This document shows, piece after piece, positions 21,217 to 52,980 of a stretch of DNA of 64,000 bases. The DNA is from Lepidodermella squamata (Eukaryota; Animalia; Gastrotricha), in the NCBI GenBank assembly GCA_047495785.1, contig JBLDXI010000046.1, positions 682,001 through 746,000 of the forward strand, in the 5' to 3' direction. The notes beneath the pieces are model-generated. The model worked only from the letters and a program-made list of their open reading frames with translations, was not told where the DNA came from and searched no databases. Position numbers and translations under genes: made by a program. The stretch's first letter is position 1, and every line of letters begins with the position of its first letter.

Positions 21217-21981
21217 TCAATTATCAGCAAATATTTGGACGAAATAATACAAATTAGGACTGTTGGGAACTCCGACGAATGCGAAGCCGAATAATTGATA
21301 GTCCTCATTTAGAACGTTAGCCACTCTCCTTGTTGATTTCATCGCCAATTCATGAGCTTGCTCCAAACTGGTGGCAATCATTAGATTTTCCGCGAAACGT
21401 CCGGCTTTAAATCCGGATTCCCGTAATTTCTGGCCCAAACTTGTTGAAAGCTTCGAATCCGACAATACAGGTGAGATTAGATCAACTGCGGAGAGTAGGG
21501 CGATCTTGCCAAGATCTTCGTTGTACTCCAAAAGAGTCAGACCCCACATACTTCGAGCTTCGTTGATCATTTCCAGCATTTGGAGGCCTTTCATGTTGTA
21601 CCATTGCATCAAAGACTCTGGCGATGAGGATAGGGATGAGAGAAGTTCCGCATCCAAAGCATGAAGGTAGGGTTGATCTTCGATGGATTCTCGGGCGACT
21701 CCGCAGATGCTGATTTCGTCCGCTTGAGATTCAGTTGCGTCAGATTTCGAAATGAGGCCTTGTTTCAAAATGCATTGGCCAGATGATTTCCAGGTGAAGT
21801 GGGAGCAGTCTATCCCTTCCAGGCATAGCTTAGCACATTGGTCTGCGCTGATATCGGATAGAACGGATAGATCTTGGTTGTTATCGAATGTGCAGGAAAA
21901 GGCCCAAATGCCATGCCATGTTATCGATTGGGAGCTGACTGCAACGGCAGATAGAGAAGCGAGAATGAGATGAGTAAGCAT
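21217..21981 (-). CDS. Secreted PAN/Apple + CAP (SCP) domain protein, copy 1, intronless
   Basis: Signal peptide; WAFSCTF..DL...CAKLC...CSHFTW...CILK (Apple/PAN_4); MLEMINEAR..L..AENL..AH...NVLNEDYQLFGF...YFVQIF (CAP). Confidence 0.8.
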   Translation of the reverse strand: MLTHLILASLSAVAVSSQSITWHGIWAFSCTFDNNQDLSVLSDISADQCAKLCLEGIDCSHFTWKSSGQCILKQGLISKSDATESQADEISICGVARESIEDQPYLHALDAELLSSLSSSPESLMQWYNMKGLQMLEMINEARSMWGLTLLEYNEDLGKIALLSAVDLISPVLSDSKLSTSLGQKLRESGFKAGRFAENLMIATSLEQAHELAMKSTRRVANVLNEDYQLFGFAFVGVPNSPNLYYFVQIFADN

Positions 21982-22054
21982 CTTCGATGTAGTATTGAAG
22001 TTTCTTTTATGGATGAATCGAGTTGAATGGTTGAAAGGTCTTCTATGGGCGGGT

Positions 22055-22064
22055 TTTTATAGCC
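22055..22064 (-). promoter_or_regulatory. TATA box (GGCTATAAAA) of PAN-CAP copy 1
   Basis: About 75 nt upstream of the ATG; the same motif lies upstream of copy 2. Confidence 0.55.
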
Positions 22065-22816
22065 ATGATCCATTTTCAGACTTGAATTTTCTCTGTAAAC
22101 AGATTTTTTCAAAATCATCGTAAACATGCGTAACAACCGTGTTTACATGGCCAGATTGGCATCAACACACGTATTGGCTTGGGTGTAATGAAAAAGCTGT
22201 TCATTGACGAAGGTTCCAAGAGTTTTTGCCTGACCACGGTGAATCGTTTGCTGTTTACAAGACTTTAATGAGTTCGTGTTATGACGCGAACTACTCTTCT
22301 TAGTCATGCTAACGTAAATTGGCATACAGTGACGTTAAGGTAGCTTATCCTGCTTGGAGACATGAATGGAGAGATGACCCCTTGGGCATACGCAATAAAA
22401 AACGAATGTTCTCAAAATGCACTTTTTAATTGCATTTTAGCATTCCAAGCTTTTTCCTTTTTGATGCTTTAACCTGGTTTCCAAGAAATGCAAATTACTG
22501 GGTCGCCCAGAGGTTGCGAGGATTCAAAATCTGGAGTTGTGAATTGGCTTCGGCTGGTTCGTCCTTTTGTTATTCCAAGATCTAAGATATTCTTCAGTCT
22601 TTTGGCTCATTCGAAACGATGCATATTCGTTATGGCTGAACAAGATATTCCGGTACATTTGAGATTGCTACGGTTCAGAACTTCAATATGCTCTATTTTC
22701 TCAAAAGAGCCGAAAACGCTTGTCCCTTGTGTGTCGCCAACAAGTTTGATAGTTTACAACGTTTCAGAGACTATCACAACTTTCGATCATTCAGCGGATT
22801 TTTTCTCCTTAGCATA

Positions 22817-22925
22817 CAGGGTGTTCAAAAAATAATAGGTAGTTATAAATAGCTTTGCTACTTTTGGCACGCGATTCAGCGTTTTCGAGCTAAAAGCTGG
22901 ATATTCTTATTTAACGAACACCTTG
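22817..22925 (+). mobile_element. Tc1/mariner-type mini-MITE (CAGGGTGTTC TIR), degenerate copy
   Basis: Near-identical to 37048-37153. Confidence 0.75.
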
Positions 22926-23251
22926 GAAAAGTATCGAAAAAGTGTAAGAAAATGACCTAACAGGTTACAGGAATATTTCTGACAAAATTATTATTCGCTG
23001 GCAAAAAGATAAGTATATGTGATTCTTCAGCAACTGTGTTAGTTCTCAAATTCACGTTCGACTCCTCGTTTGATATTTCAATATGAACAAAATTTCTCAA
23101 ATACAAGCATTTACTAGTTAACTGCCATTTATTTTTTCCAGTCAAACATTTGATTCTTCAATTAGCCGAATAAACTCCGTCATACAGAAATCTTCTTCAT
23201 TAAATTTTCATATAACAAAGACGAATATCTTCAGTATTAATGTTTTCCGTT

Positions 23252-24067
23252 TCATTGGCCAAGAATTTGATAGCTTTGATCGACAATAGACGTGTCATTA
23301 GTTGCAGCGTAAATTTCGCTGAAGATGTAAGTATCCGCTTGGCTCATTATCGGTACCAGTGCGAAGGCAAACAGCTGATATTCATTGCTCACTAAAGTGT
23401 TAAAGCTGGCTGGGTCTCTTATAAAAGCTTCATGAGCTTGTTGAATTCCATTGCTGACCACCAAATGCTGAACAGCTTTCGTAGCTTTGAATGAAGATCG
23501 TCCAAGCTTTCTGACCAGGTCAGGGACAGGTTGAGGTGTTCCTTGCCTGAAATTCTTTGGTAGGGTCCTGATTGCAGCCATTTGGAGTAATCCATTAGAT
23601 TCCAACGGCATCAAGCCTCTAGCTCGGCGGAAATCGTTGACTAGTCTCAACAGCTTGTAAGACCAACGAATCTGCTGAGCTACAAACGCATCGCCACCGT
23701 TGAAAACGGATAGCAGTTCTTTATCCAGTTCGGGAAGTCGAGCTAAAATCGGCCCATTTTCAACAAGTCGCACAACACCGCAGATACCACTGCCCACGGG
23801 TGAGGTGATAGCTGTTGCATTTGCTCGCGAAATTTCACCTCGCATCAATTCGCATCGAGCCTCTTTTGAATTCCAGGTGAAATGAGTGCATAACATTTCG
23901 TCGATGCACATTTCGACGCATAGCGATGCAGCTACCCTAGCCAGGCCTCGGTACTGGCTATTAGTGTCACTGAATGTGCACTCGTTACTCCAGATGCCTC
24001 GCCATTCCAAGTCAGCAGCACTGCACAGGGCAAAACCTCCAACCAGTAATGCAAATAATTCAAACAT
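23252..24067 (-). CDS. Secreted PAN/Apple + CAP domain protein, copy 2, intronless
   Basis: Signal peptide; WSNECTF..CVEMC..CTHFTWN..CELM; LLRLVNDFRR..L..AHEAF..YQLFAF. Paralogue of 21217-21981. Confidence 0.8.
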   Translation of the reverse strand: MFELFALLVGGFALCSAADLEWRGIWSNECTFSDTNSQYRGLARVAASLCVEMCIDEMLCTHFTWNSKEARCELMRGEISRANATAITSPVGSGICGVVRLVENGPILARLPELDKELLSVFNGGDAFVAQQIRWSYKLLRLVNDFRRARGLMPLESNGLLQMAAIRTLPKNFRQGTPQPVPDLVRKLGRSSFKATKAVQHLVVSNGIQQAHEAFIRDPASFNTLVSNEYQLFAFALVPIMSQADTYIFSEIYAATNDTSIVDQSYQILGQ

Positions 24068-24122
24068 TTTAGTATTTAAGATTTTCCTAAAAAATGCTTC
24101 TCGACGATGGCTATATGAGCTG

Positions 24123-24132
24123 TTTTATAGCC
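24123..24132 (-). promoter_or_regulatory. TATA box (GGCTATAAAA) of PAN-CAP copy 2
   Basis: About 56 nt upstream of the ATG at 24067. Confidence 0.55.
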
Positions 24133-24515: not shown

Positions 24516-25029
24516 TTATCGCTTATTCGGCCTTACTTTTCCTTCCATAATATTTTTGGCGAGAATCTGAGCCCAAATGAAGAATGTCCCTTTTTGCTGG
24601 CGGATCCATGCATGATCGATACCTTCGCTTATGTTGCAGCTTCTCCACGAAAACGCGCAAGCTGTATAATTGACTTGAAATGAAACGCTGTATATTGCTG
24701 CAATCTACAACTGTTTCGGGGCTTGAGATTTTCTTCATAGATGAAGGAAAAAGAAATTTTCCAGAAGAAGAACTGATGGAGAGGTTGGGCTCATCGTAAT
24801 AATCCGATCTTATCGAGTCATTATTTAAGGTAGATCCGCCGCTAATTCGTTTTGACCTGGCTTTTACATTTTCAAGGTTTTCGCAACGTTTGCGGTACAG
24901 ATTAGTCAAAGCGATAGCCGTAAGCTTTACAAGCGGCATGTTTAGCGGGGCTTTAGGGTCGGCAGTAGTTGTGCTAGTAACAGCGCAAAACAATGCAGGT
25001 ATTGCCAATGTTAGAACTGCAGTATTCAT
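24516..25029 (-). pseudogene. Secreted 4-Cys helical family, copy 1, frameshifted by a 20-nt deletion
   Basis: Homologous to 26561-27076. After RSCM the conserved QQKGTFFIWAQILAKNIMEGK lies in another frame. Confidence 0.75.
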
Positions 25030-26560: not shown

Positions 26561-27076
26561 TTACTGCCGACCCTTCGAAATTGTTTTTCCATCCATGATG
26601 TCTTTGGCCAGAATTTGAGCCCACATGAAGAAAGTTCCTTTTTGCTGGCAGATCGTCGCTGAGCTGAAAAGTTCCATGCATTCTCGATACCGTCTTTTCT
26701 GCTGCTGTTTCTCCGCGAAATCATACAAAGCGTCCAGATGGTTCGAAACCAATTTCGGTATATTGCTGCAATCTAAAGCCGGTTCAGTAGTTGAGACTTT
26801 CCTAGTCCTCGCAGAGGAAGGAAACCTGTTGGAAATTCTAGGATCAACAGTTTGTGAAATACTCGGTCGTGTCGTCACTCTGTTCGGGCCTGGCGTAGCA
26901 ACAGTAGTGATCACCTCTTGGTACTCGCAGCGTTTACGGTACATGTTAGTCAAAGCGACAGCGGTTAGCCTCACCAGCGAAGTGTTCGGTGCAGATAGAG
27001 GTTCGAAATGACTATCGCCAAGACCAACATTGAGCTGGAGTATCATAACAAAAATTAGAGCTATTGTCGAAGTCAT
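26561..27076 (-). CDS. Secreted 4-Cys helical family, copy 2 (family not recognised)
   Basis: Signal peptide; LVRLTAVALTNMYRKRC - P/T/S linker - DCSNIP...QKRRYRECMELFSSATICQQKGTFFMWAQILAKDIMDG. Confidence 0.85.
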   Translation of the reverse strand: MTSTIALIFVMILQLNVGLGDSHFEPLSAPNTSLVRLTAVALTNMYRKRCEYQEVITTVATPGPNRVTTRPSISQTVDPRISNRFPSSARTRKVSTTEPALDCSNIPKLVSNHLDALYDFAEKQQQKRRYRECMELFSSATICQQKGTFFMWAQILAKDIMDGKTISKGRQ

Positions 27077-28153: not shown

Positions 28154-28657
28154 TCAAACAGCAGCTGTTTTCCCGTCTAAAATATCTTTAGCTAGAAGAT
28201 GAGCCCACATGAAGAAGGTTCCACGTTGATGACAAATCGACGATGAACCGAATAGCTTCATGCACGTCTGGAACCGTTGTTTCTTTTGAATATTTTCCAA
28301 GTAGCTATAAATCACGCCTAGCTGGCCCGTAATCAATGCAGGAAAGTTTTTGCAGTCTATGACATTGTTTGCGTTACTCAGCAGTGGAAATGGTGATACA
28401 TTGATGCTGATTGGGGAACGTTTATTAGCCATGCTCGGTTCGAACAGCGACGGAAAAACGGTGACAGGGGTTGCCGAAGTAGGAGCCAATACTGGGACGG
28501 CTTCTTTCAAGCATAGTGTTCGGTAAAGATGCCGCAAGGCGACTGCTGAGAGTTTCATGATGGAGAACTCCTTCGTCGCTCTATCTCCGCTATTTTTCTC
28601 AGCCATTATGATCGGTATAACGAGTAGCACAGCCGATAAAATAGTTGCAATCGCCAT
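28154..28657 (-). CDS. Secreted 4-Cys helical family, copy 3
   Basis: Signal peptide; IMKLSAVALRHLYRTLC...DCKNFP...QKKQRFQTCMKLFGSSSICHQRGTFFMWAHLLAKDILDG. Confidence 0.85.
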   Translation of the reverse strand: MAIATILSAVLLVIPIIMAEKNSGDRATKEFSIMKLSAVALRHLYRTLCLKEAVPVLAPTSATPVTVFPSLFEPSMANKRSPISINVSPFPLLSNANNVIDCKNFPALITGQLGVIYSYLENIQKKQRFQTCMKLFGSSSICHQRGTFFMWAHLLAKDILDGKTAAV

Positions 28658-29887: not shown

Positions 29888-30366
29888 TTATTCTGAAATA
29901 CTTTTCTGAAAAATGAAGATTAGAATGAATGCTGAGGATATTAGCGTGAGACTTTCCTTGCGTTGTTTGGCACCAGAAGTGTCTAGTTTCGGTTTCCCGT
30001 TGCAATAACTCGTCCTACAACACCGCATATTACTGAGAACAACATCGGCTTGATTGTGGTCATCGGCCTCCGAGCAAGTCGCAAAGCTATTTAAACATCC
30101 TTGAATAATCGCGCCTCCTGTTTCCGTGGTCTGTAATGTATGGATCATAGTTAGCGAATGAAACAAGGTTTCGAGCTTACATAACAGAAAGTTCCTTGGC
30201 AGAATGGTGGCAGCAATTCGCCGGTTTGAACACTGATAGCGTTGTAGCAGTAGACAACCTTTGGATTGCTCATATCGGGTTCATTCATGCCCGAGGTCTT
30301 GCCGATGCTAAGAATAAAGAAAACGACCGTTGGCAAGAGAGGAAACATGCTTATCCAATAGCTCAT
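29888..30366 (-). CDS. Ly6/uPAR three-finger-type protein, probably GPI-anchored (2 exons, intron about 30131-30180)
   Basis: Signal peptide; VYCYN...C..TFCY|TTETGG.IIQGC....C...CCRTSYCN; hydrophobic C-terminal tail LISSAFILIFIF. Confidence 0.8.
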
Positions 30367-31429: not shown

Positions 31430-31984
31430 TTAAGCAGCTACAACGGTGTTACCCGACATTATGTTCTTAGCTATCATATTAGCCCATATGAAGAACGAGC
31501 CCCGCTGATGGCAGATATCAGCCGAGCTGAAGACCTTCATACACGTTTCGAGCCGCTGTCTTTTCTGAATATCCTCCAAAAACGTTTTCACTGCTTGCAA
31601 TTGGCCTTTTATCATGTCGGGAATCTTGCTGCAGTCGAATTTGCTCGTCCGAGATCGCAAGAGAGGTTCTCCGTGGAGATTCGCAGGTTTTGGCCGTAAC
31701 GGACCTTTCGCCGGTTGATGAAAAAGCGGGAAAACTGTTATTGGGCTTGGTGTGGTGGAAGGAAGGACCGGAGTTTGGTTAACACATCGTTTTCTGTACA
31801 AATTGGTGAGAGCAGCAGTTGATAGCTTCAACAGTGTCAACTGCTTGTAGCCATTCGAGTCAAAGTTCGCAAAGCTAGACACAACATTCGGCATGAAAAA
31901 CGCGCCGGTAGTTGCCAAGATTATAAATTGAGATTGCATCGATGTAATGAAACTGCGAAGTGATAATTGTGATATGTCCATCAT
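31430..31984 (-). CDS. Secreted 4-Cys helical family, copy 4 (probable start at 31939)
   Basis: LLKLSTAALTNLYRKRC...DCSKIP...QKRQRLETCMKVFSSADICHQRGSFFIWANMIAKNIMSG. Confidence 0.85.
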   Translation of the reverse strand: MMDISQLSLRSFITSMQSQFIILATTGAFFMPNVVSSFANFDSNGYKQLTLLKLSTAALTNLYRKRCVNQTPVLPSTTPSPITVFPLFHQPAKGPLRPKPANLHGEPLLRSRTSKFDCSKIPDMIKGQLQAVKTFLEDIQKRQRLETCMKVFSSADICHQRGSFFIWANMIAKNIMSGNTVVAA

Positions 31985-32437: not shown

Positions 32438-34297
32438 TCAAAACCTGGTCATCAAAGTCATGAAACTGAGAAGTGAGACTAAGGATTCAACTATTCCGGC
32501 ATTGTTAGCTTTTCTGTCCGTTTTACTGTCCTTCGTTTTCAGTGCCATGTTCAGCTGCTCCTTTACATCTCGATTGCAATTTCGACCAATAACGGGCAGT
32601 GGCTTGGTTCGGCAGGCTTCTGTTAATTGTCTTACTTGCTTAGCCGATAGCGGCGAATCATAAACTGAGACACAAGCCATGTTATCGTTTTCAAACAATC
32701 CATACTGGGTGTTCGTCTCATGATCGTAAGCTCCGCCCACTGAGATTGAGGTTGTAGCCGATGAGAAAATCTTAGAATCGATTTTAGTCCAGTTCGAATA
32801 CAGTGTATTCATATCAAACGGCAACTTTTTGCCTGGCCAGGCAACAACAGTCGGAGTTTTATGGAAATTATAGATCGTAAGCCGTTGACTCGAAGAATCG
32901 TACGTAACAGCGTAAAATTTCCAATATTTACAAACTTGAGAAATTTCCATCTTACCAGCAACGCTTTGTTTGATCTTATCGAATACTTTCACTACGAGTA
33001 AGTAGTCTTTCGAGCAATGAAGTGTTAAGGAGGCTTGGTCGAATTCCATACTAAACAGCCCAGTCTCGCGGCCTTCTTTCCAGATCGGATCCCTCTCAAC
33101 TGCTGAATTCACTGAAGCGTAAAACGCAAACGTGAACCCTGATGAAGTAACAGGAATGTTGTTGTAAGTAGCCAGGGTTCGATTTTCATCTCTCTTCATG
33201 TTGATGCAACAGTAGCCAACTGTGTAACTGAAGTAGCCAACAGAATTGCCATAGGGCGAGCTTGCTTCAACCAGGGCACTTCCAGACTTTTGAGCTGGTT
33301 CAATCCCGCAGATCGAATCGGTAAATCCACTTGTTTTATCGAGATGTGTTTCGAAGACCAACGATTTTGGATTAGGCCACTGAATTCCAAGTTTTACTAG
33401 AAAAATCTAAAATTATCAAAAAGTTTGATTTAGGCAGTAACCAACCTTCGCCGTCACGTTTGCAAGCAGTAGAATCGCCAAGCTGTCCAGGCGGCATCAT
33501 GCAAGATTCCGGTAGTGACTTTACTTCATCAACATTCAATGCAACGCTGTAAATTGAGAAACAGAACAAGTGATCCCCTTTTCGAACGCCGTATCTCTTG
33601 TAAGTATCCCTATCCAGGGCATCACCCAGGGTGACCTGGGCCCAACCTTCGCCTTGAATGATCGGCTTATCCATCCGGCCAAAGACAGTTTTCGTCAAAT
33701 TTGAGCTATTGAAGGCGTAAATCGTGAGTTGATTTGAAGCACTGTCATGAGAAATCATATAAAATCGCCAATAATAACCGCATACGTTCGAAACATTGAG
33801 TGATAAGGTGGCGTTTATGTCCTCTTTATCGAAAATTTTGACCAGCAAATTGTTGGCCCAACACACAGCTGTAAGATAACCAACATCTGTTTCCAGCTCT
33901 AGCAAACCGACTATTCGATCTGCCGTTGTATTTGCGTAGAATGAAATGCTGAAATCCGATTTCAATGGAATTGGTCGATAAATCGCGAGGTACTCATTTT
34001 GGTCACTGATTTTCGCCGTTGAAGTGTAAGAGGCGTTTCTATAACCAAACGGGCTGTTGCCCTGGCTTAAAGTCGCCGACTTACTAACATTTACCGGGGC
34101 TAGATCGCAAATGTTATCATTTAGGTCGTTGCTAGCATTCATTTGGACATGAAAAACTAGCGAATCGTTACGAGGCCAGTTGGTGAGCGCTGCAACTATC
34201 AAATTGGAAAAATTAACTGAAATCACACGAGAAAGATTTTACCAGTATTTAGACATATTGGAAGCGTAATGAATAGAATAAACATGTCCCAATTCAT
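32438..34297 (-). CDS. Secreted tandem double LamG/ConA-like protein with a GPI-like tail (3 exons)
   Basis: Signal exon MNWDMFILFITLPICLNT and an intron lead to ORF 33372-34226. A 49-nt intron (GTTGGT...TTCTAG) gives VKLGIQWPNPKSLVFETH and joins ORF 32438-33361. The C-terminus is NNAG plus a hydrophobic tail. Confidence 0.8.
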
Positions 34298-38787: not shown

Positions 38788-40234
38788 TCAAGCAAGATTA
38801 GCAGGCAGGCCAATAACCGGAGCAAATCCATATCGCATATTGCCGACATCGAAAACGTTGTAATAGCGCTGAATGATGGGCTTGCCAACTACGACTTGAT
38901 TTTCTGCGGATTGAGACGCAGACAATCTAAAAATTCCCCGTCCTAATGAACACCAACCCCGAGTCTTGGTAGTCTGGTGTGATCCGAGATAGACAATCGG
39001 CGGTACGACCATCTTTCCACTCTCGAAATCCAGCGAAAAACTAGGAAGAGATGCAGCGAGATATGCACCACATGGCCAGCCCCAGTTAGTGCCATTCCAA
39101 GAGTCTGCAGTGTCTTGGCAATTGGCGCAAGCTTTTGTTGCACCGAGAGCTGTTGCAATAGTTGTGACGACATCTAGAGAAGGGAAAATAATTGCCGCAG
39201 TCGTGCCGGTATCAACGAGCAGATAGCAACGCCCTCTTTGACAAGCTGTCGGAGTTCCAGCAACCTTTAAATAGAATTATTGATAGGTACGTTTTGAAGA
39301 ACTCGAGAACCAATACTTACTGAAATTCCAGTCATATTCACATACCATTTTAAATCGCGGATCCCCTTCTGAGTCATAGGTATGTAGACTAAAGGTCCTG
39401 AGTATTGCGATGAATCAATAGCTCCAACATTCATGCCACCAGTAGTAAAATCGGAGCTAGCTGTGAGGTAAAGACTCCACAGAGGTTGGTTACCGCTTGA
39501 AACTGCGGCTCGCATTAGGCCTGGTAAAATGCAGGAAGGCGAGGTTCTTGCACACTCTCTTTGATAGTTCTGCCACCCTAAACCTAGGACACCTGAATGA
39601 CCTTTAGGTGGATTGCCCGATGGGCATGCATATGTGACAGCTATCGTTGTATTCGTCACCTTAAAATTGCCTAAAGCAACGTTTTCGTAGCCAAATGTGC
39701 ACGATAAAGAAGTGGCGCTGCCGTAGAAGATTTCGCTCGCTGGAATCGCCCCGGATCGTGTGGCGTTAATCCACGAGGAAGATTGATCTTCGTCAAAGCC
39801 TCCGATCCCGTTGGCTAGGGAACGGGCATAACGAGAACTTGCAACTTGCAATGCCTTCGATCCAGAGTCTACCATCAAACGGAAGGTCTGTGGAGGTGTG
39901 CCGAAGGACACATCAACGAGATAAGCCGATGGAGACTATTCCATGATATTTAAAAGAAATAAAATGTTCTGCTCATCTCATACGTTTAGACCACCACTTG
40001 TGACATCAGCCTTGTAGACTACGGCATTTGCCGCATATACTGAAAAATTTATGCTAGTTATTCAAGGAATTACTCAGATTCAAATTGCCTGCAATATTCA
40101 GGAGAAGATAGATCTCGCTGGATTTTATTGAATTGGCCATTATAATAAGAAAAAGCAGGATTACTTCAACTAGTAAGCATTCAGCCTAAGCCTTTCAGCA
40201 ACAAGTGTAATTGGGGCATGACCTCCTTCTCCAT
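38788..40234 (-). CDS. Pepsin-like (family A1) aspartic protease, multi-exon; 5' exons uncertain
   Basis: YLVDVSFGTPPQTFRLMVDSGS, flap YGS, GVLGLG, then after an intron CYLLVDTGTT, and VVGKPIIQRYYNVFD..NMRYGFAP. A hydrophobic N-terminal stretch LLVEVILLFLIIMA lies near 40140-40180. Confidence 0.85.
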
Positions 40235-40458: not shown

Positions 40459-41868
40459 CTACGCTTCAAAGTTCATTACTTCCAATATTTTAAGTTTCGT
40501 CATTGAATACTGCAGCTGATCCGCAGCATCGAGAGGGCTTTCATTCATATAATTGTGCACATTGATAAGGGGCGGCGCTTTGTGAACCAGGTACTGAACG
40601 GCATCAAACTGACCATTCGCGGCAGCTAGATGCAAAGCAGTCGATCCAGTGATGTAATCCCTACTGAAAAAATCAGCGCCGTGATCTGCGAAGAACCGAA
40701 CAGCCCATGAGTTACCCCGAGCCGCTGCAACCATCAACGGCGTAGATCCATAAGCACCCCGCGTATCGACATTTGAAGACATGTTTAGAACTAGAAACTC
40801 GTAAACGGACGGAGCTCCGATGAAAGCAGCAATATGAAGGGCTGTATTGTTGAATTTGTTCTTGCTATCGATAAGCCAAGGTGCTCGAACGGAGAAGTAC
40901 CGCACAAAATCAACTCGGACCAAGTGAGCCGCGATATGAAGAACATTATCCCCTGTGCCAGGTCGAGTAGCGTTGATATCAGCCCCGCATTCCACCAGAA
41001 AACGGCCTATTTTGAACGCTCCAACCTCAACAGCGACCATAAGAGGGGTTGTACCGTCATTTGTCACAGCATTCACGTCAGCCATGCCATTTATCACTAG
41101 AAACCCCACAGCATCTCTTTGATCGTTGTAAACAGCGTTATGCAGGGCTGTAGCATTATGAATATTCCTTTCGTCGATCAAAGATGGGTAGTGAGTCATT
41201 AGGTACCCCAAGACCTCTAAATGGCCGTTAAATGCCGCGAGGTGAAGGGCTGTCGAGCCGACATCGCCGTCTTTTGCTTGAAAATCAGCCCCGCTACTGA
41301 GGAGTAGCCGAAGGATTGCTAAACTTCCCCTCCTAGCTGCGATGTGAAGAGGGGTTTGTTTCGAAACGCCACTTTGCTGGTTAAGATCAACTTTATGGAT
41401 CTTTATAAGGTATTTCACCACGTCGAAACGGTCGCCTGAGACAGCCAGACTGATAGGTGTTGAGTTCAAGCTGGTTTTCAAACGGACGAGATTGCGGTTG
41501 ATCTCGGCAAAAGCTTTGACAATATCCAAGTGGCCTCGTAGAGCTGCCAAATGGATCGGCAGAACTTGGGTTTCCTTCCCATTGTCCAAAGCTGATTCGA
41601 CGTAAATATCTGCCCCTGCTCTCTCGATAAGGTAACGAGCGACCTCAATGTTGTCATTTTCGATAGCGTTGATGAGAGGAGTTTTGCCTTTTTCATCGCG
41701 ACTTTCCAAGAGATCGGTGAAAGATTTCAAATCTGGGGCAGAAGCCAGAAGAGTTCGAACTTGATTGAGGTCTCCCTTGATTGCTGCCTCGTTAATTGGG
41801 TGGGATAGTACCACGCTTAGGGCCAAATAGGCCAGAATAACAATTCGCCCTAGATAATAGAACATCAT
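40459..41868 (-). CDS. Ankyrin-repeat protein (~12 repeats) with an N-terminal signal peptide, intronless
   Basis: MMFYYLGRIVILAYLALSVVLS-HP, then repeated TPLH/TALH..A..G repeats to the C-terminus. Confidence 0.9.
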   Translation of the reverse strand: MMFYYLGRIVILAYLALSVVLSHPINEAAIKGDLNQVRTLLASAPDLKSFTDLLESRDEKGKTPLINAIENDNIEVARYLIERAGADIYVESALDNGKETQVLPIHLAALRGHLDIVKAFAEINRNLVRLKTSLNSTPISLAVSGDRFDVVKYLIKIHKVDLNQQSGVSKQTPLHIAARRGSLAILRLLLSSGADFQAKDGDVGSTALHLAAFNGHLEVLGYLMTHYPSLIDERNIHNATALHNAVYNDQRDAVGFLVINGMADVNAVTNDGTTPLMVAVEVGAFKIGRFLVECGADINATRPGTGDNVLHIAAHLVRVDFVRYFSVRAPWLIDSKNKFNNTALHIAAFIGAPSVYEFLVLNMSSNVDTRGAYGSTPLMVAAARGNSWAVRFFADHGADFFSRDYITGSTALHLAAANGQFDAVQYLVHKAPPLINVHNYMNESPLDAADQLQYSMTKLKILEVMNFEA

Positions 41869-42007: not shown

Positions 42008-42946
42008 TTACGCGTTTGCAGTAGCGACTGGAGCAGTTTTTTTCTCCTTTGCGACTACGTCGTTAATTTTCGCCTGCAGCTGTCTGTCGATCTTGTAGTT
42101 GACCCATTTCGGGTAAATTCGGCTTCTCAAGTAACCATCGATGTCATGCTTGATAGCTCCACAAGTTTTGTCGTAATGGCCGACAGTTCGAAGAGCCTGC
42201 TTAGCAAATTCCTCAGGGCTAACCACCCAAAATCCATCGACATAACGAGCCATTTTCGTTCTGACAACATGCGACTCAACAGCCTGGACCGTGATTCCGT
42301 GGCGAGAATTGTCGTATTGAAATGTCAGGCCCTCGCTGAATCGCGAGACAAAAGTCTTAGCGGCGTAGTACATCGGAGCAGTGGCTGGAAGACTCGCAAC
42401 GCCTGATGAAACATTGATAATCACCCCTTTTCTCTGATCCGCTATCATTTTCCGTAGAACAATATGGCTCATCATCACCATAGATGTCATATTGATGTTC
42501 ATCATTTTGACAAGGTTAGATCGGAACATTTCGTGAAGTTGCTTCTGGACGTTGATATTTGCCCCGACGTTGTTGACCAGAACGTCGATGTCCTTGAAAT
42601 CACCGAGTTGTTCCTCAATTCGTTCGTAAATATCAGTTCGCTGGAAGTCGGCAGCAATAGTTCGAATGGTGACTTGAGGGTAGGCGGATTTAATTTCTTC
42701 CGAAACAGCGTTGAGACGTTCGGGATTTCGCGAGATCAAAACAAGCCGCTTCATCCCAGATTTCGCCAGCTCGAAAGCGTATGCCTTGCCGATGCCATCT
42801 GTCGAGCCGGTTATGACTGCTGTTGACAATTTCGAGAAATCGACTTTGCTACCAATAGCGTGAGAATGCGCGAATTTAGCCAGGCGATAAGTGCCTCGGG
42901 CGGTGAAAAACGAAGCTAAAGCCAGACCGATTTCAGCGAACACCAT
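42008..42946 (-). CDS. Short-chain dehydrogenase/reductase, HSD17B12/KAR (3-ketoacyl-CoA reductase)-like, intronless
   Basis: AVITGSTDGIGKAYAFELA, LISRN, VLVNNVG, IINVSS, YxxxK (YYAAK), V.TKM. Confidence 0.9.
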   Translation of the reverse strand: MVFAEIGLALASFFTARGTYRLAKFAHSHAIGSKVDFSKLSTAVITGSTDGIGKAYAFELAKSGMKRLVLISRNPERLNAVSEEIKSAYPQVTIRTIAADFQRTDIYERIEEQLGDFKDIDVLVNNVGANINVQKQLHEMFRSNLVKMMNINMTSMVMMSHIVLRKMIADQRKGVIINVSSGVASLPATAPMYYAAKTFVSRFSEGLTFQYDNSRHGITVQAVESHVVRTKMARYVDGFWVVSPEEFAKQALRTVGHYDKTCGAIKHDIDGYLRSRIYPKWVNYKIDRQLQAKINDVVAKEKKTAPVATANA

Positions 42947-43665: not shown

Positions 43666-43775
43666 CGATAAGTGCCTCGGGCTGTGAAAACGAAGCTAAA
43701 GCCAGACCGATTTCGGCGAAAACCATTTTCATTTAAGAAATTGCACCTCTAATGAATTGATATAGCGAGTCTGTC
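43666..43775 (-). pseudogene. Duplicated 5' end and upstream region of the SDR gene (truncated)
   Basis: Close copy of 42885-42990 including the ATG region, with an indel in the coding part. Confidence 0.75.
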
Positions 43776-44505: not shown

Positions 44506-44874
44506 TTGAATAAACTGAAAGGTCAGCAAAAGACTAAGATGACTAAGATGGTCGAACTACCCGGCAAACAAGCTATGTGCGAGCTCAACGACTACGATCT
44601 TGCTGAAAATTGCGTGAAAAACGGCCTGATTTGCAAGCCGTTCATGTTACGATTCCGATGGTTTATTGTCAAGCAATCTGATGTTGTTCAATGTTTCAAC
44701 TGCCAGCGATATGGTCACCTGGCTCGAAACTGCTCTGATGAGACGCGATGCTTACGATGTGGTCGCAAACACGACGTGAAGACTTGCTTGCGGGGTGTTC
44801 GTTGCTGCAATTGTGGTGGCGAGCACACCGCAAACTCGAAGGATTGTCCTATGCGCCGGCCTTCGGCTGGCTGA
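44506..44874 (+). mobile_element. Non-LTR retrotransposon ORF1 (gag-like) zinc-knuckle fragment
   Basis: QCFNCQRYGHLARNC - CLRCGRKHDVKTC - CCNCGGEHTANSKDC, the triple CCHC of I/Jockey-type ORF1. Confidence 0.85.
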
Positions 44875-45725: not shown

Positions 45726-46005
45726 TCATTCATTGCCGGGAATGCATCTCCAAATACGCATAACAGCACCGGGCTTGTGGTTTGATGGGACCACCGTAGA
45801 GTAGCAAGTGCTGGAAATTCAAGGTGTGAAACTTGGTAAGCAATTTAGGGAAAACTGGGTCTTACTGTCCATCGCAGCACTTCGGCCCGGTCCAGTAGTC
45901 GCACTTGCTGCCGGAAGGGAGGCACTCTTCGTCAGCAAAAGCAGTCATCGCGAAAATAGTGGCAACGATAGCCAGGGCAATAATCAAATTCTTAGCCAAG
46001 GTCAT
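45726..46005 (-). CDS. ICK/knottin toxin-like secreted peptide 1 (2 exons, intron 45811-45865)
   Basis: MTLAKNLIIALAIVATIFAMTAFA-DEECLPSGSKCDYWTGPKCCDGHTCYSTVVPSNHKPGAVMRIWRCIPGNE; cysteine framework C-C-CC-C-C. Confidence 0.85.
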
Positions 46006-46703: not shown

Positions 46704-46963
46704 ATGCCAAACCGACTGATTTTCCTGGTTTTTGCCATTCTTTGCATGTCACTTTGCGCTCATGCCGCTACTGAGTGCCTGGCTCAGGAATCGAAGTGCA
46801 GTTACTACAGCGGCCCCAAGTGCTGTGATGGGTTGTATGTAAATTAAGTTCATTTTTTGCCCTCCATTCCAAAGATTTTCTTTACAGGACCTGCTACGGC
46901 GTGTTGATACCTGGCCCGTCTCCTGGAAAAGTTACCAAAGTCTACCGATGCATCAAAATTTGA
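46704..46963 (+). CDS. ICK/knottin toxin-like secreted peptide 2 (2 exons, intron 46832-46887; not in ORF track)
   Basis: MPNRLIFLVFAILCMSLCAHA-ATECLAQESKCSYYSGPKCCDGTCYGVLIPGPSPGKVTKVYRCIKI; AATAAA at 46981. Confidence 0.85.
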
Positions 46964-47028: not shown

Positions 47029-47538
47029 TCAAGGCCACCATTTAGGGTCTTCTGGATCACAGCGTTCTAGCCTAGACACGGCAAACAACTCGACGTAGTA
47101 ATTGAGCCTCCGATCGTCCAATCGATGTGCTGATCCGAAGCCGAATAACTTGTAATCACCCAACATATTCGCCTCATCGTCCTCGGATTTAATCCAAGCT
47201 TCATGCGCACTTTCCGGCGTCTCGCCATACGCGATATTTTCCGCCAGCAGACGAGGTCCTTTGTCCGGCCACATGAAACCAGCCCTCAGTACGCGCTGGA
47301 TCGGTCTCGAGCCATCCGAGCCGAAGCTGTCGAGGAATCCATGCAAAGCCATGTCCTCAGCATGAGACTGAGCGGCTTCTTTCAGCTTCGAATTTAAACA
47401 CAACTGCCGTGACGTAGCATTTTTCGACGTCCGGTATTCGTTAACCAATTTCACCATTTCCTTAGCCGGATCACGCCTCCAATCAGCATTGCATAAAGAG
47501 CTTAGGTAAAATAAAGTAACAGCCAAAATTTTCAGCAT
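47029..47538 (-). CDS. Secreted single-domain CAP/SCP protein 1
   Basis: Signal MLKILAVTLFYLSSLCNA; LCLNSKL.EAAQSHAEDMA..GSDGSRP..R..RAGF..AENIA..ANML..YYVELF..ERCD. Confidence 0.88.
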   Translation of the reverse strand: MLKILAVTLFYLSSLCNADWRRDPAKEMVKLVNEYRTSKNATSRQLCLNSKLKEAAQSHAEDMALHGFLDSFGSDGSRPIQRVLRAGFMWPDKGPRLLAENIAYGETPESAHEAWIKSEDDEANMLGDYKLFGFGSAHRLDDRRLNYYVELFAVSRLERCDPEDPKWWP

Positions 47539-47596
47539 AACAAAATCAGCTAATAAATAACATCTAAAATAAAAACAAGTAAATTTATGTAAAATT

Positions 47597-48100
47597 TTAA
47601 TAATTTTCAAAATCGTCGCAAGTTTCGCTGGCAGAAGACGCAAAAAGTAGTACAAAGTAGAAAAAGCCGGGTTGATCTATCAATTCTGCCGCTCCGAAGC
47701 CGAAGAATGCCAAATCGTGAGCCATCATGTTTTCGTAATGTGGTACCGAGTTCGTCAAAGCTTCATGGGCTCGCCTTATCCCAGTGTTGTAGACAAGATT
47801 TTCAGCGAGCCGCGAGACCCGGAAACCAGCACGTCGAACTCGATCGACTGGCGACGTTCCGTCAGAGCCTGTGTCGTCCAAAAAGCCATTCCTAGCCATA
47901 TCGATTGCATGGGCTCGAGCTGCTATGCTTAGGGTTTCACTTAAACACAACAATGGTATGGATTTCTCGCGACGAGCCGAGTTGACCAAGAGTAACATTT
48001 CCGCTGCCCATTCTTCGTGGCGAAATTTCAAGCAGTAACAAATCGAATTGAGAAGGCAACAAGTGATAAGTAGCGTAGATGCTGTACGAACGGTGATCAT
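47597..48100 (-). CDS. Secreted single-domain CAP/SCP protein 2
   Basis: Signal peptide; LCLSETL..AARAHAIDMA..GSDGTSP..AENL..HYENMM..ETCD. Probable 5'UTR intron at about 48137-48189 and TATA at about 48342-48350. Confidence 0.88.
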   Translation of the reverse strand: MITVRTASTLLITCCLLNSICYCLKFRHEEWAAEMLLLVNSARREKSIPLLCLSETLSIAARAHAIDMARNGFLDDTGSDGTSPVDRVRRAGFRVSRLAENLVYNTGIRRAHEALTNSVPHYENMMAHDLAFFGFGAAELIDQPGFFYFVLLFASSASETCDDFENY

Positions 48101-48380: not shown

Positions 48381-48896
48381 TTAATCGCAGTATTCTTCGT
48401 CGGAAGTTGCGAAAAGTTCGACGTAGCAGTACAGTCCAGGCTTGTCAGCCATTTCAGCCATTCCGAAGCCGAAAAAGCGATACCTCTCTCGAAGCATATT
48501 CTCGCGATGGTACTGCGATTCCATGAAGCCTTCGTGAGCTCGATTGAGATCGTACTCGTAACCACCGCTGAGTAAGTTCTCGGCTAGAAGTCGCGGCTCA
48601 AATCCGGCCCGGAGCAACCGTTGGTCAGGCCTCGAGCCGTCAGAGCCTGAATGATCGACGAAACTGTTTCGAGCCATGTCTTCCGCATGTGACTGAGCGG
48701 CGTCGTTTAATTTCGCATTTGAGCAGAGCTGGCTTTTCACGCCGTAGTCGAGCCGAGCATGGTTAACGAGGCGTAGCATCATTTTCGACAAATCATCGTT
48801 CGAAAAGCTGGAAATCACGTTGGCAAATGAAAGGCCAAGAAAATACGAATAAATAATGGTAATGAGATAACAATGTTTGCTTGTTAATTTTTGCAT
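48381..48896 (-). CDS. Secreted single-domain CAP/SCP protein 3
   Basis: Signal peptide; LCSNAKLNDAAQSHAEDMA..DHSGSDGSRP..AENL..HRENML..YVELF..EEYCD. Confidence 0.9.
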   Translation of the reverse strand: MQKLTSKHCYLITIIYSYFLGLSFANVISSFSNDDLSKMMLRLVNHARLDYGVKSQLCSNAKLNDAAQSHAEDMARNSFVDHSGSDGSRPDQRLLRAGFEPRLLAENLLSGGYEYDLNRAHEGFMESQYHRENMLRERYRFFGFGMAEMADKPGLYCYVELFATSDEEYCD

Positions 48897-49828: not shown

Positions 49829-52057
49829 ATGGCATTGATTTTCCCCCTTATCATTTCCTCGATAGTTTGGAACGTTGTTGATGGTTCCAGCGTACAAGAA
49901 CTAACTTTCAACAATAGTCAACTTGAAAACAGTAAGTTTCGTGTTTGGAAAGTCCAGCCTTCAAATATTTAACAATTTCACGCAGCCGCTTGGCGATTGA
50001 TGACCTTCCCTGTGGAGGCCGGAGTTACCCTGAATGCTCTTGCTGCGACGATACCGGTAAATTAACTTAATTCGAGACATTTCTACCCATGCTTTTTCAG
50101 GTTTCGAACGACAATGGTGACATTCACGTTGTCGCTTCGATTCAAATGCATGCAACGGGTTCGGTTGTAGTCAGCGTTACCAGCCAGGCTATCGAAAATG
50201 CTATGAGCCTCAATAGTTTGTCTTTCGCTTATCTGCTTTCATTTGAATCCCAATTATTTCATGATAGATGTCACGTTTTACCTGGCTGAAAGTGCGCCTC
50301 AAAACAAAACCTTGGCCCAATATTGCACAGAGGAGGTCGAGCCTCCTGGTCAGACTATTACGCTGGAGTTGGACTATTATGTCGGGAAATGGGTGGTTTC
50401 GAGGGTAATGATCCAATTTTGTCCCCATAATTTATACTCAGTGTAAGATCAGATAGCGAATACGACATTTCGATGCTACGTCGAAGTGCCGAGCGTTGAG
50501 TCGTCTCAGTTCTACCTCGTAATTCTAGTAACATCGAATGATACGGCGATATTCAACCAAGTTTCGGTTGAAATTCTCGATAAAAACCGCACTCTCCCTA
50601 TCTCGGACGTTTCAACTCCTGATACAATGACTGGAATTACTGCTACAGAACCTCAAAATCCGAAAATTTCTGGTGAGGGGGCGAGTTTGAAACCATCGAT
50701 TGGTTCTTCGGCTGCAACCACCTTGCATCCGCAACTACCCGAAATTCTAGTTCGCACAACAACCTCGAGCTATTTAACGAGCTCTACTACGTCAAGAAAT
50801 GTCCCGCTAGGACTCTCGACATCGCCAGAACAGTCCACCGAAAAACCTGAGATGCCGAATGAATCACCGGCAGCCACTTCCTATTCGACTCATTTAGATG
50901 AGATAACAACTTCAACTGGGCTAATAGGTTCAAGCAATGACTCTTCAAGCTCAGGTACAACGACCGAAAGTTCGCCGCTAGAAAATAGCACTACAACGAG
51001 TAAATATCGAGCAGAAACTGCTCCTGGAATTTCCTCTTCAACGGAAGGTTTGGATCGCGATTTAACCTCAGAGAATACGCCAATTGTCTCAGCTCAGAGC
51101 TCAGTAAAAGTGGTGACTGAATTTATCCAAAAAATGAGCTCAACCTTGCCGACTACCTTGCCAGAACATTCGACTGATCATGCTTCAGGCCATGGGTCTG
51201 ACTTCGAAACATCCCCATTGCCCTTACTTAATTCTACCTTTCATAGCAGCGCTATTTCGAAATTCTCTGAATATGGTACAACGGAAAGTAGTCTTCCCTC
51301 GGAAAATAATGTGAACACCTTTCTTCCTTATTTTTCCACGCGAGGCGAGCTCTCATCACTTACCACCTCAGCTGCTGATACTATCGAAGTCTCGAATGAC
51401 CCGCTCACCACCACTCCCTCTTCGTTTTCGACCACCAAAGAGGTTTCTTTTAAAGCTGGAACTGAAATGACTGGTCAAGATCATCACTTCGCTAAGACAT
51501 TTGCTAACGCGATCAATCGAAATTCGTCTTCAATGCTTGAAAAATTTGCAACAACCAGCGTCGTAGATGTTAAAGCGGACATCACCACAAATATGCCAAT
51601 TATTCTCGAAGCTAGCTTAACAACTGAACGAGAAGCAGTAGAGCTAACCACAGTGGTTCCTGGTTCTTCAATAAATTACGCAACAACCGCGATGGAAAGT
51701 GCTCCATCCTTGGTGGTTGTAGTGAGTGTGGAGGTCGGCCAAATCGATCCAAGTCCCCTCGATAACGAAACAGTTGGCATTACGCCCAACAGCGACCTGA
51801 ACCAGAAGAGTAACAGCAATTCGCAGCCTTACGTCGTGCCGAGTAGTGGTGGCGGCTCTTCAAGTAATGGAGGAAGTGCAAGCGCTCAAACAGGGTCTTC
51901 GCAACAACGAAATTCCGCTATTAGGCACTCTTGCTCAGGTACCATTTTCGAAGTTTTAACAAATTCCTTTCGAAATATTTTATTTTGATTAGGACAATCC
52001 TCAATGGTAGCTGTGTTTACTGTTTTAGCGTTCCATCAGCATTATTTAAATATTTAA
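49829..52057 (+). CDS. Mucin-like secreted/GPI protein: N-terminal globular domain plus Ser/Thr-rich stalk (multi-exon)
   Basis: Signal exon MALIFPLIISSIVWNVVDG; short introns link to ORF 50486-51988 (S/T/E-rich). A probable final intron gives the hydrophobic tail GQSSMVAVFTVLAFHQHYLNI. Confidence 0.7.
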
Positions 52058-52261
52058 GCCAGTGTTTTTCGATGCAAAAATCTCATTTTGTGTGTTTGAG
52101 TAATAGTAATAAAACAACATCGTTTTAATTTATATCGCAGTGTTTCACGAAGAAATGAATAATAATAGGCTAAATGCATTAGCGTATTCGCCACTGCATC
52201 GTCATAAAAACTTGTAACACCGTGTGCTCAAGTAATGAAGTAACATTGGCATGCCGCGAAA

Positions 52262-52980
52262 ATGTTGGCTCAATTTATTTTGGTTTTTTCAGTTATCCTC
52301 ACGGTAAGTGGCCAAGCAAATGATCGAGGTAACCGAATTTTTCCTCGTTTCTTGGTTATTATTGCTTATGTTATTTTAAGGTTACTGTGGACTTGATAGG
52401 TATATCTACCGGCAAGCAGACCAATTTCCAGGCCGAAGTAGTAAATTGCAGATATTCTCAACTCCGATGATTTCATGCGATGGGTTACTCCGCGGATGGC
52501 GATTCTTAGCAATGGCAGATATTATCGAAAACCTGCGACTTGCTGTCTTTCGCCTTGATCGCAACGGCGTCTTCAATGTGGTGAACAGTTCTTATGTCAA
52601 CTTGAATTTGGTCATGTCGACGCGATGGGGATATAGCCCGGTTAAAACTTGGATAACTGTTAAGCTAGGCGAGCCGTATTATGTCAGAAAAACGGATTTT
52701 ATCGGTATATTTCAAACGCTCTCTACTTCCAAGTCTTCATTGGTTTCTATTTTACTTAGGGGTCTATTATGACAGCATATTCACAGAGCAGAGTATGCAG
52801 GCAATTGGAACTAGAGCCTTTGATCCGCTAACGGACAATGCAAATGGGGACTACACTTGCTATACATTCAATGTTGATGCTGGTGCCCTATCTCGGCGTA
52901 AGGTAGCATCTAGAGAAGCAATTACCGAGAGAAGGATACCTGCTTTGTTGCCGCTGGTCGTTGACTCGGCTGTGTCATAA
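52262..52980 (+). CDS. Secreted uncharacterised beta-rich protein (3 exons)
   Basis: MLAQFILVFSVILTVSG..; ISCDGLLRGWRF..LRLAVFR..DFI|GVYYD.. joins ORFs 52446-52772 and 52681-52980 through a short GT-AG intron. Confidence 0.7.

What the first reader, a model, noticed from the sequence alone, without database searches (positions are those of the whole stretch)
21217..52980. Dense island of secreted effector/toxin-like genes from about 10 unrelated families
Seen: about 18 genes in 32 kb, and all but the SDR carry a signal-peptide-like N-terminus. Fifteen are on the minus strand, they are intronless or have only ~50-nt introns, and several are tandem paralogues. Established: CAP, knottin, three-finger, protease and mucin families are repeatedly recruited into venoms and gland secretions. 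Inference: this is a co-regulated gland, defence or predation secretome locus in a small invertebrate.
Basis: partly seen in the sequence, partly recalled or inferred. Interest (0 to 1): 0.75.

Follow-up and report, generated by a model that had tools for sequence, protein, structure and literature searches.

The report
Cluster of exported-protein genes, gastrotrich
A 32-kb stretch of a small freshwater animal's genome (probably the gastrotrich Lepidodermella squamata) really is packed with 18 genes for exported or surface-anchored proteins from about a dozen families. It looks like a duplication-prone neighbourhood of ordinary extracellular proteins, not a toxin arsenal.

Summary
Window 21217-52980 carries 19 genes plus one retroelement remnant, and 18 have a signal-peptide-like start (all but the SDR). 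Sixteen genes are on the minus strand. Introns are 26-55 nt.

- The two 'ConA-like' ORFs are one two-domain gene.
- At least three products end in GPI-like tails, so they are surface proteins rather than toxins.
- One copy of the 170-aa family has a broken frame.
- That '4-member' family gives at least 150 matches genome-wide.

Density of signal-peptide ORFs is about 5 times that of 160 kb of random samples from the same genome, and about 18 times if multipass receptors are left out. Counted by family, the excess is only suggestive. Secreted genes continue about 35 kb upstream.

Most island families are large expansions found only in this animal's lineage. Their paralogues lie scattered elsewhere, and the other arrays I looked at hold one family each.

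The 'effector/toxin, co-regulated gland locus' reading is untested here because I had no expression data. The protein families give it no specific support. Two short operon-like runs are the only hint of shared transcription.

The scan's first readers flagged one other 'secretome island' in this genome, not followed up. I file this as a new member of a known kind, the multi-family expansion cluster of secreted genes.

The parts
21217..21981 (-). PAN/apple + CAP fusion protein, copy a (254 aa, single exon, signal peptide)
   Evidence: Pfam CAP 33.5 bits and PAN_1 25.0 bits, both above their cut-offs. YkwD-type model E 7e-8.
23252..24067 (-). PAN/apple + CAP-like, copy b (271 aa, signal peptide)
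   Evidence: Pfam PAN_1 25.4 bits. 32% identical to copy a over residues 15-252. A third copy lies at C46:1.358 Mb.
24523..25029 (-). 170-aa four-cysteine helical family, copy a; reading frame breaks after the third cysteine
   Evidence: The conserved C-terminal motif continues in another frame, and the stretch with the fourth cysteine is missing.
26561..27076 (-). Four-cysteine helical family, copy b (171 aa, signal peptide)
   Evidence: No Pfam hit. At least 150 matches genome-wide. AF2 model is helical.
28154..28657 (-). Four-cysteine helical family, copy c (167 aa, signal peptide)
   Evidence: Alignment A1.
29888..30366 (-). Ly6/uPAR-type three-finger protein; 2 exons, 50-nt intron (30180-30131), signal peptide and hydrophobic C-terminal tail
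   Evidence: Eight cysteines ending in CCxxxxCN, read. Pfam UPAR_LY6 E 0.009 on exon 2, below cut-off.
31430..31984 (-). Four-cysteine helical family, copy d (184-aa ORF; signal segment after an internal Met)
   Evidence: Alignment A1.
32438..34297 (-). One gene: signal exon, 26-nt intron (34242-34217), ConA-like domain A, 49-nt intron (33445-33397), ConA-like domain B, GPI-like tail
   Evidence: Splice sites read. Single-ORF 555-aa paralogue in L003. AF2 pTM 0.74, beta sandwich. Foldseek finds the ConA-like jelly roll. Atlas gives Laminin_G_3.
35136..35945 (-). PPPDE/DeSI-like (Peptidase_C97-like) protein with signal peptide, Cys-rich N-terminal part and GPI-like tail; single copy
   Evidence: Pfam PF05903 21.8 bits, below the 29.2 cut-off. 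His and Cys motifs read. Only one match in the genome.
38788..40140 (-). Pepsin-like aspartic protease, 4 exons (introns 34, 48 and 26 nt), weak signal-like start, no obvious prosegment
   Evidence: Pfam Asp 83.6 bits. DSGS and DTGT motifs both present. Exons read. About 18 paralogues, 79-81% identical to three copies at C2:2.67 Mb.
40459..41868 (-). Ankyrin-repeat protein (469 aa) with a signal-peptide-like start
   Evidence: Pfam Ank_2 349 bits. N-terminus read.
42008..42946 (-). Short-chain dehydrogenase with N-terminal membrane anchor; the one non-secreted gene. It lies 140 nt upstream of the ankyrin gene.
   Evidence: Pfam adh_short 132.5 bits. Spacer read.
44506..44874 (+). CCHC zinc-knuckle ORF, a retroelement gag remnant, not part of the secreted set
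   Evidence: Pfam zf-CCHC 26.2 bits.
45726..46005 (-). Knottin-type peptide A, 2 exons, 55-nt intron (45865-45811), signal peptide
   Evidence: C-C-CC-C-C spacing read. Pfam Toxin_7 21.9 bits, below the 27 cut-off.
46704..46963 (+). Knottin-type peptide B, 2 exons, 53-nt intron (46835-46887), signal peptide; head to head with A
   Evidence: Read. It is the only other match in the genome.
47029..47538 (-). Compact CAP protein 1 (signal peptide); starts 59 nt after the stop of CAP 2
   Evidence: Pfam CAP 41.9 bits. Spacer read.
47597..48100 (-). Compact CAP protein 2 (signal peptide)
   Evidence: Pfam CAP 46.9 bits.
48381..48896 (-). Compact CAP protein 3 (171 aa, signal peptide)
   Evidence: Pfam CAP 50.7 bits. 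YkwD/DalA-type models E 1e-15 to 1e-17, below their cut-offs. Seven matches in the genome.
49829..51988 (+). Mucin-like gene: 5 exons (introns 54, 44, 52 and 48 nt), signal peptide, about 150-aa N-terminal domain, then about 470 aa rich in Ser/Thr
   Evidence: Exons read. ORF. No Pfam hit.
52262..52980 (+). Secreted protein with an unnamed beta-type domain, 3 exons, signal peptide
   Evidence: Exons read. No Pfam hit. At least 38 paralogue matches, mostly at C7:188-374 kb.

Best explanation
This is a real local concentration of genes for proteins that leave the cell or sit on its surface. It was built by old tandem duplications and by insertion of single members of large families found only in this animal's lineage.

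The gene-dense, transposon-sprinkled neighbourhood runs from about 647 kb to 735 kb of contig C46.

The products most likely work at the animal's interfaces (gut lumen, epidermis or cuticle, mucus):
- protein digestion (pepsin-like protease)
- binding of sugars or microbes (ConA-like, PAN, CAP, ankyrin, knottin)
- surface coating (mucin, Ly6, GPI-linked proteins)

They are not a venom-like arsenal. Some neighbours may be co-transcribed in short operon-like runs: CAP3-CAP2-CAP1, and SDR-ankyrin-protease. A single shared programme for all 18 is not shown.

Shown: the gene models, domain identities, family sizes and local enrichment. Inferred: where the proteins act, and any co-regulation.
For: - Gene models and signal-like starts for 18 of 19 genes.
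- Enrichment over 160 kb of random samples.
- More secreted genes upstream: Sushi-CTLD x2, three more two-domain ConA-like genes, LamG-like x2. None downstream.
- The families are multi-copy and scattered: four-Cys family at least 150 matches, ConA-like 47 matches, protease 20, last-gene domain 38.
- The other four-Cys arrays examined hold mainly that family.
- Paralogues within the island are 31-52% identical, so the duplications are old.
- Signs of turnover: one copy with a broken frame, a duplicated fragment of the SDR 5' end, and a gag remnant.
- GPI-like tails on three products.
- Operon-like spacers of 59 and 140 nt, with AATAAA (SDR-ankyrin) or a variant signal (CAP2-CAP1) followed by an AG acceptor just before the next ATG.
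Against: - No expression data were reachable, so neither tissue nor co-regulation is known.
- Signal peptides and GPI signals were judged by eye.
- The background sample is only 0.13% of the genome.
- The family-level excess is modest (P about 0.01) and uncorrected for genome-wide scanning.
- Most intergenic gaps are 450-2800 nt, too long for nematode-style operons.
- The functions assigned to the domains are generic.
Confidence: 0.5

Rival explanations
1. The island is a co-regulated secretome locus of one gland or defence cell type, and its products are released together as effector- or toxin-like molecules.
For: - 18 of 19 genes carry export signals.
- 16 of 19 genes are on one strand.
- Two operon-like spacers.
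- CAP, knottin, protease and mucin families recur in gland secretions of other animals (my own knowledge).
Against: - No expression evidence.
- At least three products look membrane-anchored.
- The knottin hit to a toxin family is below cut-off.
- The CAPs lack a CRISP-type tail.
- Strand bias counted by family is 10 of 13 (one-sided P about 0.05).
- Other arrays of the same families are not accompanied by the same partners.
- The probable host feeds on bacteria and algae (my own knowledge).
Confidence: 0.2
2. Chance juxtaposition. The genome simply holds very many secreted-protein genes in tandem arrays, and several small arrays happen to abut here with no regional cause or shared function.
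For: - 818 of 5278 scan notes on this genome mention secretion (unchecked).
- Random samples also contain secreted and receptor arrays.
- The like-for-like family-level excess is only 5 against about 1.4 expected.
Against: - The gene-level excess is 5- to 18-fold.
- About 12 families in 32 kb with a single non-secreted gene among them.
- The enrichment continues about 35 kb upstream.
- First readers flagged only two 'secretome' islands in 1980 windows.
Confidence: 0.25
3. Artefact. Gene models or the assembly are wrong, for example chimeric joins from whole-genome amplification, so the island does not exist in the animal.
For: The probable source assembly was made from amplified DNA of a single animal (PMC11660948).
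Against: - Long intact ORFs with Pfam domains above their cut-offs.
- Consistent GT-AG introns that restore the frame.
- Diverged paralogues side by side rather than identical copies.
- No second near-identical copy elsewhere.
Confidence: 0.03

Closest known systems
Strongyloides 'expansion clusters' (astacin, CAP-domain and acetylcholinesterase genes; PMC10575991)
   Same: Genomic regions where members of several expanded secreted families, including CAP-domain proteins, lie interleaved. They are repetitive and fast-evolving.
   Different: - Those clusters hold three families and are tied by RNA-seq to the parasitic stage.
- Here about 12 families sit together, with 1-4 copies each.
- The animal is probably free-living.
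- No expression link is known.
Clusters of rapidly evolving secreted or immune-response genes on nematode chromosome arms, e.g. C. elegans antimicrobial peptide and lectin clusters (my own knowledge, not checked here)
   Same: Lineage-specific secreted families in tandem arrays, in regions rich in duplications and transposon remnants. Some are co-induced.
   Different: Those arrays usually hold one family each. Co-induction there is shown experimentally, and here it is not.
Venom or gland toxin gene clusters of snakes, spiders and cnidarians (my own knowledge)
   Same: The CAP, knottin, three-finger and protease folds recur.
   Different: - No gland or toxicity evidence here.
- The three-finger protein is of the Ly6 type with a membrane tail.
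- The CAPs are compact YkwD-like domains without a CRISP tail.
- The knottin match to a toxin family is below threshold.
Spliced-leader-resolved operons (nematodes, tunicates; proposed for this genome by earlier notes of the scan)
   Same: Same-strand neighbours 59-140 nt apart, with a poly(A) signal followed by a splice acceptor just before the next start codon.
   Different: Only two or three gene pairs fit. Most gaps are 0.45-2.8 kb. No polycistronic RNA or leader was seen here.

Membership tests
CAP superfamily (PF00188) | Match to the family profile above the curated cut-off | tested here: met
   Four proteins score 33.5-50.7 bits against a cut-off of 21.1. PAN+CAP copy b is recognised only through its paralogue.
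Venom-type CRISP / antigen-5 CAP proteins | Large eukaryotic CAP domain followed, in CRISPs, by a hinge and a cysteine-rich domain | tested here: not met
   The proteins end right after a domain of about 120 aa. Their best profile matches are bacterial-type YkwD/DalA models (E 1e-15 to 1e-17, below those models' cut-offs).
Inhibitor cystine knot (knottin) peptides | Signal peptide plus six cysteines spaced C-C-CC-C-C | tested here: met
   Both spliced peptides show the pattern. Disulfide connectivity was not testable.
Spider-toxin family Toxin_7 (PF05980) | Profile match above the cut-off | tested here: not met
   21.9 bits against a cut-off of 27. Only the first 20 profile positions match.
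Ly6/uPAR three-finger domain | 8-10 cysteines ending in CCxxxxCN, usually with a GPI signal | tested here: inconclusive
   The pattern and a hydrophobic tail are present by reading. The Pfam hit is E 0.009, 16.8 bits against a cut-off of 24.8.
Secreted three-finger toxins | No membrane anchor; soluble mature peptide | tested here: not met
   A hydrophobic C-terminal tail follows the last cysteine.
Pepsin-like aspartic proteases (A1, PF00026) | Two catalytic Asp motifs (D-T/S-G) in two lobes | tested here: met
   83.6 bits. DSGS in exon 3 and DTGT in exon 4.
Pepsin-like aspartic proteases (A1, PF00026) | N-terminal prosegment of about 40 aa (zymogen) | tested here: not met
   Only about 20 residues lie between the signal-like segment and the first conserved block.
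Concanavalin A-like lectin / Laminin_G_3 | Jelly-roll beta sandwich | tested here: met
   AF2 pTM 0.74. At least 500 Foldseek matches at E<=1e-3; the rows shown are mainly the ConA-like (HCN) sub-domain of clostridial neurotoxin binding domains, plus a CBM40. Atlas gives PF13385. The Pfam sequence hits are below cut-off.
PPPDE/DeSI peptidase (PF05903) | Profile match plus His and Cys catalytic dyad | tested here: inconclusive
   21.8 bits against a cut-off of 29.2. His- and Cys-containing motifs are present by reading.
Multi-family 'expansion cluster' of secreted genes (sensu Strongyloides) | Four or more genes of expanded secreted families within one genomic region | tested here: met
   18 genes.
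Multi-family 'expansion cluster' of secreted genes (sensu Strongyloides) | Shared up-regulation in one stage or tissue | not testable with these tools
   No transcript record was found for four island proteins.
Spliced-leader operon | Same-strand genes with short spacers, a poly(A) signal, then a trans-splice acceptor | tested here: inconclusive
   Fits SDR to ankyrin (140 nt) and CAP2 to CAP1 (59 nt). No RNA evidence here.

The most novel reading that the evidence does not exclude
The island, perhaps together with the secreted genes upstream of it, is a unit expressed in one secretory cell type of a gastrotrich, such as an adhesive, pharyngeal or gut gland, or a defence epithelium. Part of its transcription would run through spliced-leader operons. 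That would make it the first mapped gland or defence secretome locus in this phylum. It would also bring in two undescribed protein families: the four-cysteine helical family with at least 150 copies, and the beta-domain family with at least 38 copies.
Probability: 0.2. Interest if true: 0.6.

Novelty: new member of a known kind. Interest (0 to 1): 0.4.

Why it matters
Gastrotrichs have almost no functional genomics. This is a curated map of 18 neighbouring exported-protein genes, several from families with no name. It gives concrete probes for finding the animal's gland, gut and surface cell types. It also offers a test case for whether unrelated secreted genes are kept together by regulation or only by local duplication. 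The surprise is modest, because clusters of expanded secreted families are already known in other small invertebrates.

Tried and rejected
WHAT LED NOWHERE.
- Scripted signal-peptide scoring and permutation could not be done, because the script machine was lost. I replaced it with eye calls on ORF listing output.
- Exact-protein look-ups for transcripts of four island genes found nothing.
- The word-index search found no relative of the four-Cys protein. It found one weak hit, 35% identity, for CAP3.
- The Atlas found nothing for the four-Cys protein.
- Foldseek and VIA-align on its helical model gave only generic helical-hairpin matches.
- A PDB sequence search with the ConA-like profile found nothing.
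- Pfam found nothing for the last gene's domain, even in larger paralogues.

WHAT I CONSIDERED AND REJECTED.
- The two ConA-like ORFs as two genes.
- The four-Cys family as a four-member family.
- The Foldseek hits to clostridial neurotoxin binding domains as a toxin relationship. They are the generic ConA-like sub-domain at 12-18% identity.

WHAT I LEFT OUT. Joined (spliced) protein models were never sent to any search or fold. Only single exons or single-exon ORFs were used, by reference.
Full report
WHERE THIS IS. The window is G000:C46:682001-746000, mid-contig on a 1.82-Mb contig of a 121.2-Mb, 151-contig genome. Earlier notes of the scan name the gastrotrich Lepidodermella squamata (unchecked leads). 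The published assembly of that species has 122 Mb, 157 contigs and 43% GC (PMC11660948). That fits the size, the contig number and the 40-45% GC seen here. I could not test identity directly, so I treat it as probable.

GENE MODELS. I read ORFs and splice sites by hand, because the script machine was lost. Coordinates for every gene are in the parts list.

Minus strand:
- Two PAN/apple+CAP fusion genes (Pfam).
- Four genes of a 170-aa four-cysteine family with no Pfam match.
- A two-exon Ly6/uPAR-type gene with a 50-nt intron, eight cysteines ending in CCxxxxCN, and a hydrophobic C-terminal tail.
It has a signal exon, a 26-nt intron, a first ConA-like domain, a 49-nt intron, a second ConA-like domain and a GPI-like tail. 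A 555-aa paralogue just upstream carries both domains in a single ORF, with the same linker.
- A PPPDE-like protein with a signal peptide and a GPI-like tail.
- A four-exon pepsin-like protease with both catalytic motifs.
- A 469-aa ankyrin-repeat protein with a signal-like start.
- A membrane-anchored SDR, the only gene without an export signal.
- Knottin A.
- Three compact CAP genes.

Plus strand:
- Knottin B, head to head with A.
- A five-exon mucin-like gene whose signal exon starts at 49829.
- A three-exon gene for an unnamed beta-type domain.
- A CCHC zinc-knuckle ORF, a retroelement remnant.

Thirteen introns were measured at 26-55 nt, all GT-AG and frame-restoring. Two more, in the last gene, were mapped but not measured. 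There are 19 genes, not about 18 separate secreted ones. One four-Cys copy (24523-25029) changes frame after its third cysteine and lacks the stretch that carries the fourth. Several products look anchored to the surface rather than released.

IS THE DENSITY ABOVE BACKGROUND? I fetched sixteen arbitrary 10-kb stretches from eleven contigs. I listed their ORFs with the same tool.
- ORFs of at least 110 aa that begin with a signal-like segment: 11 in 160 kb. Eight are multipass receptors: four class-C-GPCR-like and four Cys-loop-channel-like. Three are soluble or GPI-type proteins.
- The island has 11 such ORFs in 31.8 kb, none of them a receptor, plus seven more genes whose signal sits on a short first exon.
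- Like for like, that is about 5-fold, or about 18-fold without the receptors.
- Tandem copies are not independent. Counting each family once per locus gives 5 here against about 1.4 expected (Poisson P about 0.01). This is not corrected for the roughly 3800 possible windows of this size.
- These are eye calls on a sample of 0.13% of the genome. The enrichment is clear at gene level and only suggestive at family level.

WHERE THE ENRICHMENT STARTS AND STOPS. It extends upstream:
- 672-682 kb holds a class-C receptor gene and three more two-domain ConA-like genes, one of which runs into the window at 498-1527.
- 662-672 kb holds two signal-Sushi-C-type-lectin genes.
- 642-652 kb holds two more LamG-like secreted genes.
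- Downstream, 746-776 kb is transposon-rich or gene-poor.

WHAT THE FAMILIES ARE.
- The ConA-like call is now solid at fold level. The AF2 model has pTM 0.74. Foldseek gives hundreds of jelly-roll matches. The top ones are the ConA-like sub-domain of clostridial neurotoxin binding domains and a CBM40, at 12-18% identity. That is a shared common fold, not a toxin relationship. The Atlas points to Laminin_G_3.
- The CAP domains match bacterial-type compact YkwD/DalA models better than the general Pfam model. They have almost no close relatives in the word-index search.
- The four-cysteine family is not a four-member family. Its C-terminal module of about 60 aa gives 150 scored matches out of 254 candidates across the genome, in arrays on C33, C42, C3 and C30.
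- A profile search of 1.84 billion representatives found 54 distant relatives. All are small signal-bearing proteins from unnamed ENA or Logan assemblies, without Pfam domains or names. One lies on a eukaryote-like 77-kb contig.
- The model of that family is an all-helical hairpin or bundle with a disordered linker, and no informative structural match.
- Match counts for the other families: protease 20, about 18 paralogous genes, with the nearest three at C2:2.67 Mb 79-81% identical; ConA-like 47; last gene's domain 38, mostly at C7:188-374 kb; compact CAP 7.
- The PPPDE-like gene and the knottin pair are unique to this locus.

HOW IT MOST LIKELY CAME ABOUT AND WORKS.
- Paralogues inside the island are only 31-52% identical, so the duplications are old and the arrangement has been kept.
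- The region also shows turnover: a copy with a broken frame, a duplicated fragment of the SDR 5' end at 43553-43732, and retroelement pieces.
- Other arrays of the same families are not accompanied by the same partners, so the island is not a recurring cassette.
- My best reading (0.5) is a duplication-prone neighbourhood where genes for interface proteins accumulate and are retained.
- Its products would serve digestion, sugar or microbe binding, and surface coating in the gut lumen, epidermis or cuticle.
- Two spacings look operon-like. The SDR stop is followed by AATAAA and then an AG acceptor 3 nt before the ankyrin ATG, 140 nt in all. CAP2's stop lies 59 nt before CAP1's ATG, with an acceptor in between.
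- If the spliced-leader system proposed by earlier notes is real, these pairs may be co-transcribed. That is inference, and most gaps are 0.45-2.8 kb.

RIVALS.
- Chance abutment of arrays in a secretome-rich genome (0.25) is not excluded by my small background sample.
- An assembly or model artefact (0.03) is unlikely, given intact domains and diverged neighbours.

COMPARISON WITH KNOWN SYSTEMS. The closest described thing is the Strongyloides 'expansion cluster': genomic regions with interleaved astacin, CAP-domain and acetylcholinesterase genes linked to the parasitic stage (PMC10575991). This island shares the structural definition, but it has far more families, few copies of each, and no expression link. 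It is a new member of a known kind.

PROCEDURE NOTES. Spliced models were searched exon by exon, by reference only, and the joined step was left out. The copy with the broken frame was only described. First readers of the scan flagged one other 'secretome island' elsewhere in this genome, which I did not examine.

Noticed in passing
window 24523-31984; G000 C33:793-830 kb, C42:4.25-4.30 Mb, C3:907-951 kb, C30:766-777 kb: The '4-member' four-cysteine helical family has at least 150 matches in the genome (254 candidates). It has 54 distant relatives in unnamed environmental eukaryote assemblies. No Pfam family, no name and no structural match. It looks like a large undescribed family of small secreted proteins.
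   Followed up: partly
window 34242-34217 and 39290-39265: Two GT-AG introns of only 26 nt, one in the ConA-like gene and one in the aspartic protease. Both restore the frame exactly. This is unusually short for an animal.
   Followed up: partly
window 21217-24067; G000 C46:1358320-1359054: A PAN/apple domain fused to a compact, bacterial-type (YkwD-like) CAP domain, in three copies on this contig. I have not seen this architecture described. The origin of the compact CAP (ancient transfer or divergence) is open.
   Followed up: partly
L003 204-4375 (C46:672-676 kb); L006 337-7428 (C10:1.50 Mb): A class-C-GPCR-like gene sits next to LamG/ConA-like secreted genes at two unlinked loci. Class-C-like receptor genes also turned up in 4 of 16 random samples, so that family seems very large.
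   Followed up: no
window 40459-41868: An ankyrin-repeat protein with a signal-peptide-like start and no Sushi module. It adds a simpler architecture to the secreted-ankyrin genes that other notes of the scan report for this genome.
   Followed up: no
window 38788-40140: The pepsin-like protease seems to lack a prosegment. It belongs to a family of about 18 genes. Its nearest relatives (79-81% identity) form a trio on another contig, so this copy arrived by a fairly recent dispersed duplication.
   Followed up: partly
window 43553-43732 (-): A short ORF repeats the first 14 or so residues of the neighbouring SDR. This is a partial duplication of its 5' end.
   Followed up: no
window 52262-52980; L031 1258-2775 (C7:360 kb); L032 240-929: An unnamed beta-type domain, often joined to Thr-rich mucin-like linkers, gives at least 38 matches. 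There is a large cluster at C7:188-374 kb. No Pfam match.
   Followed up: partly
window 5718-8092, 44506-44874, 53465-53942; L001 4126-8023; L002 936-3728: Retroelement pieces (reverse-transcriptase-like and gag-like ORFs; a full LINE-like ORF of 1134 aa in L001; a GC-rich element in L002) bracket and interrupt the secreted-gene neighbourhood.
   Followed up: no
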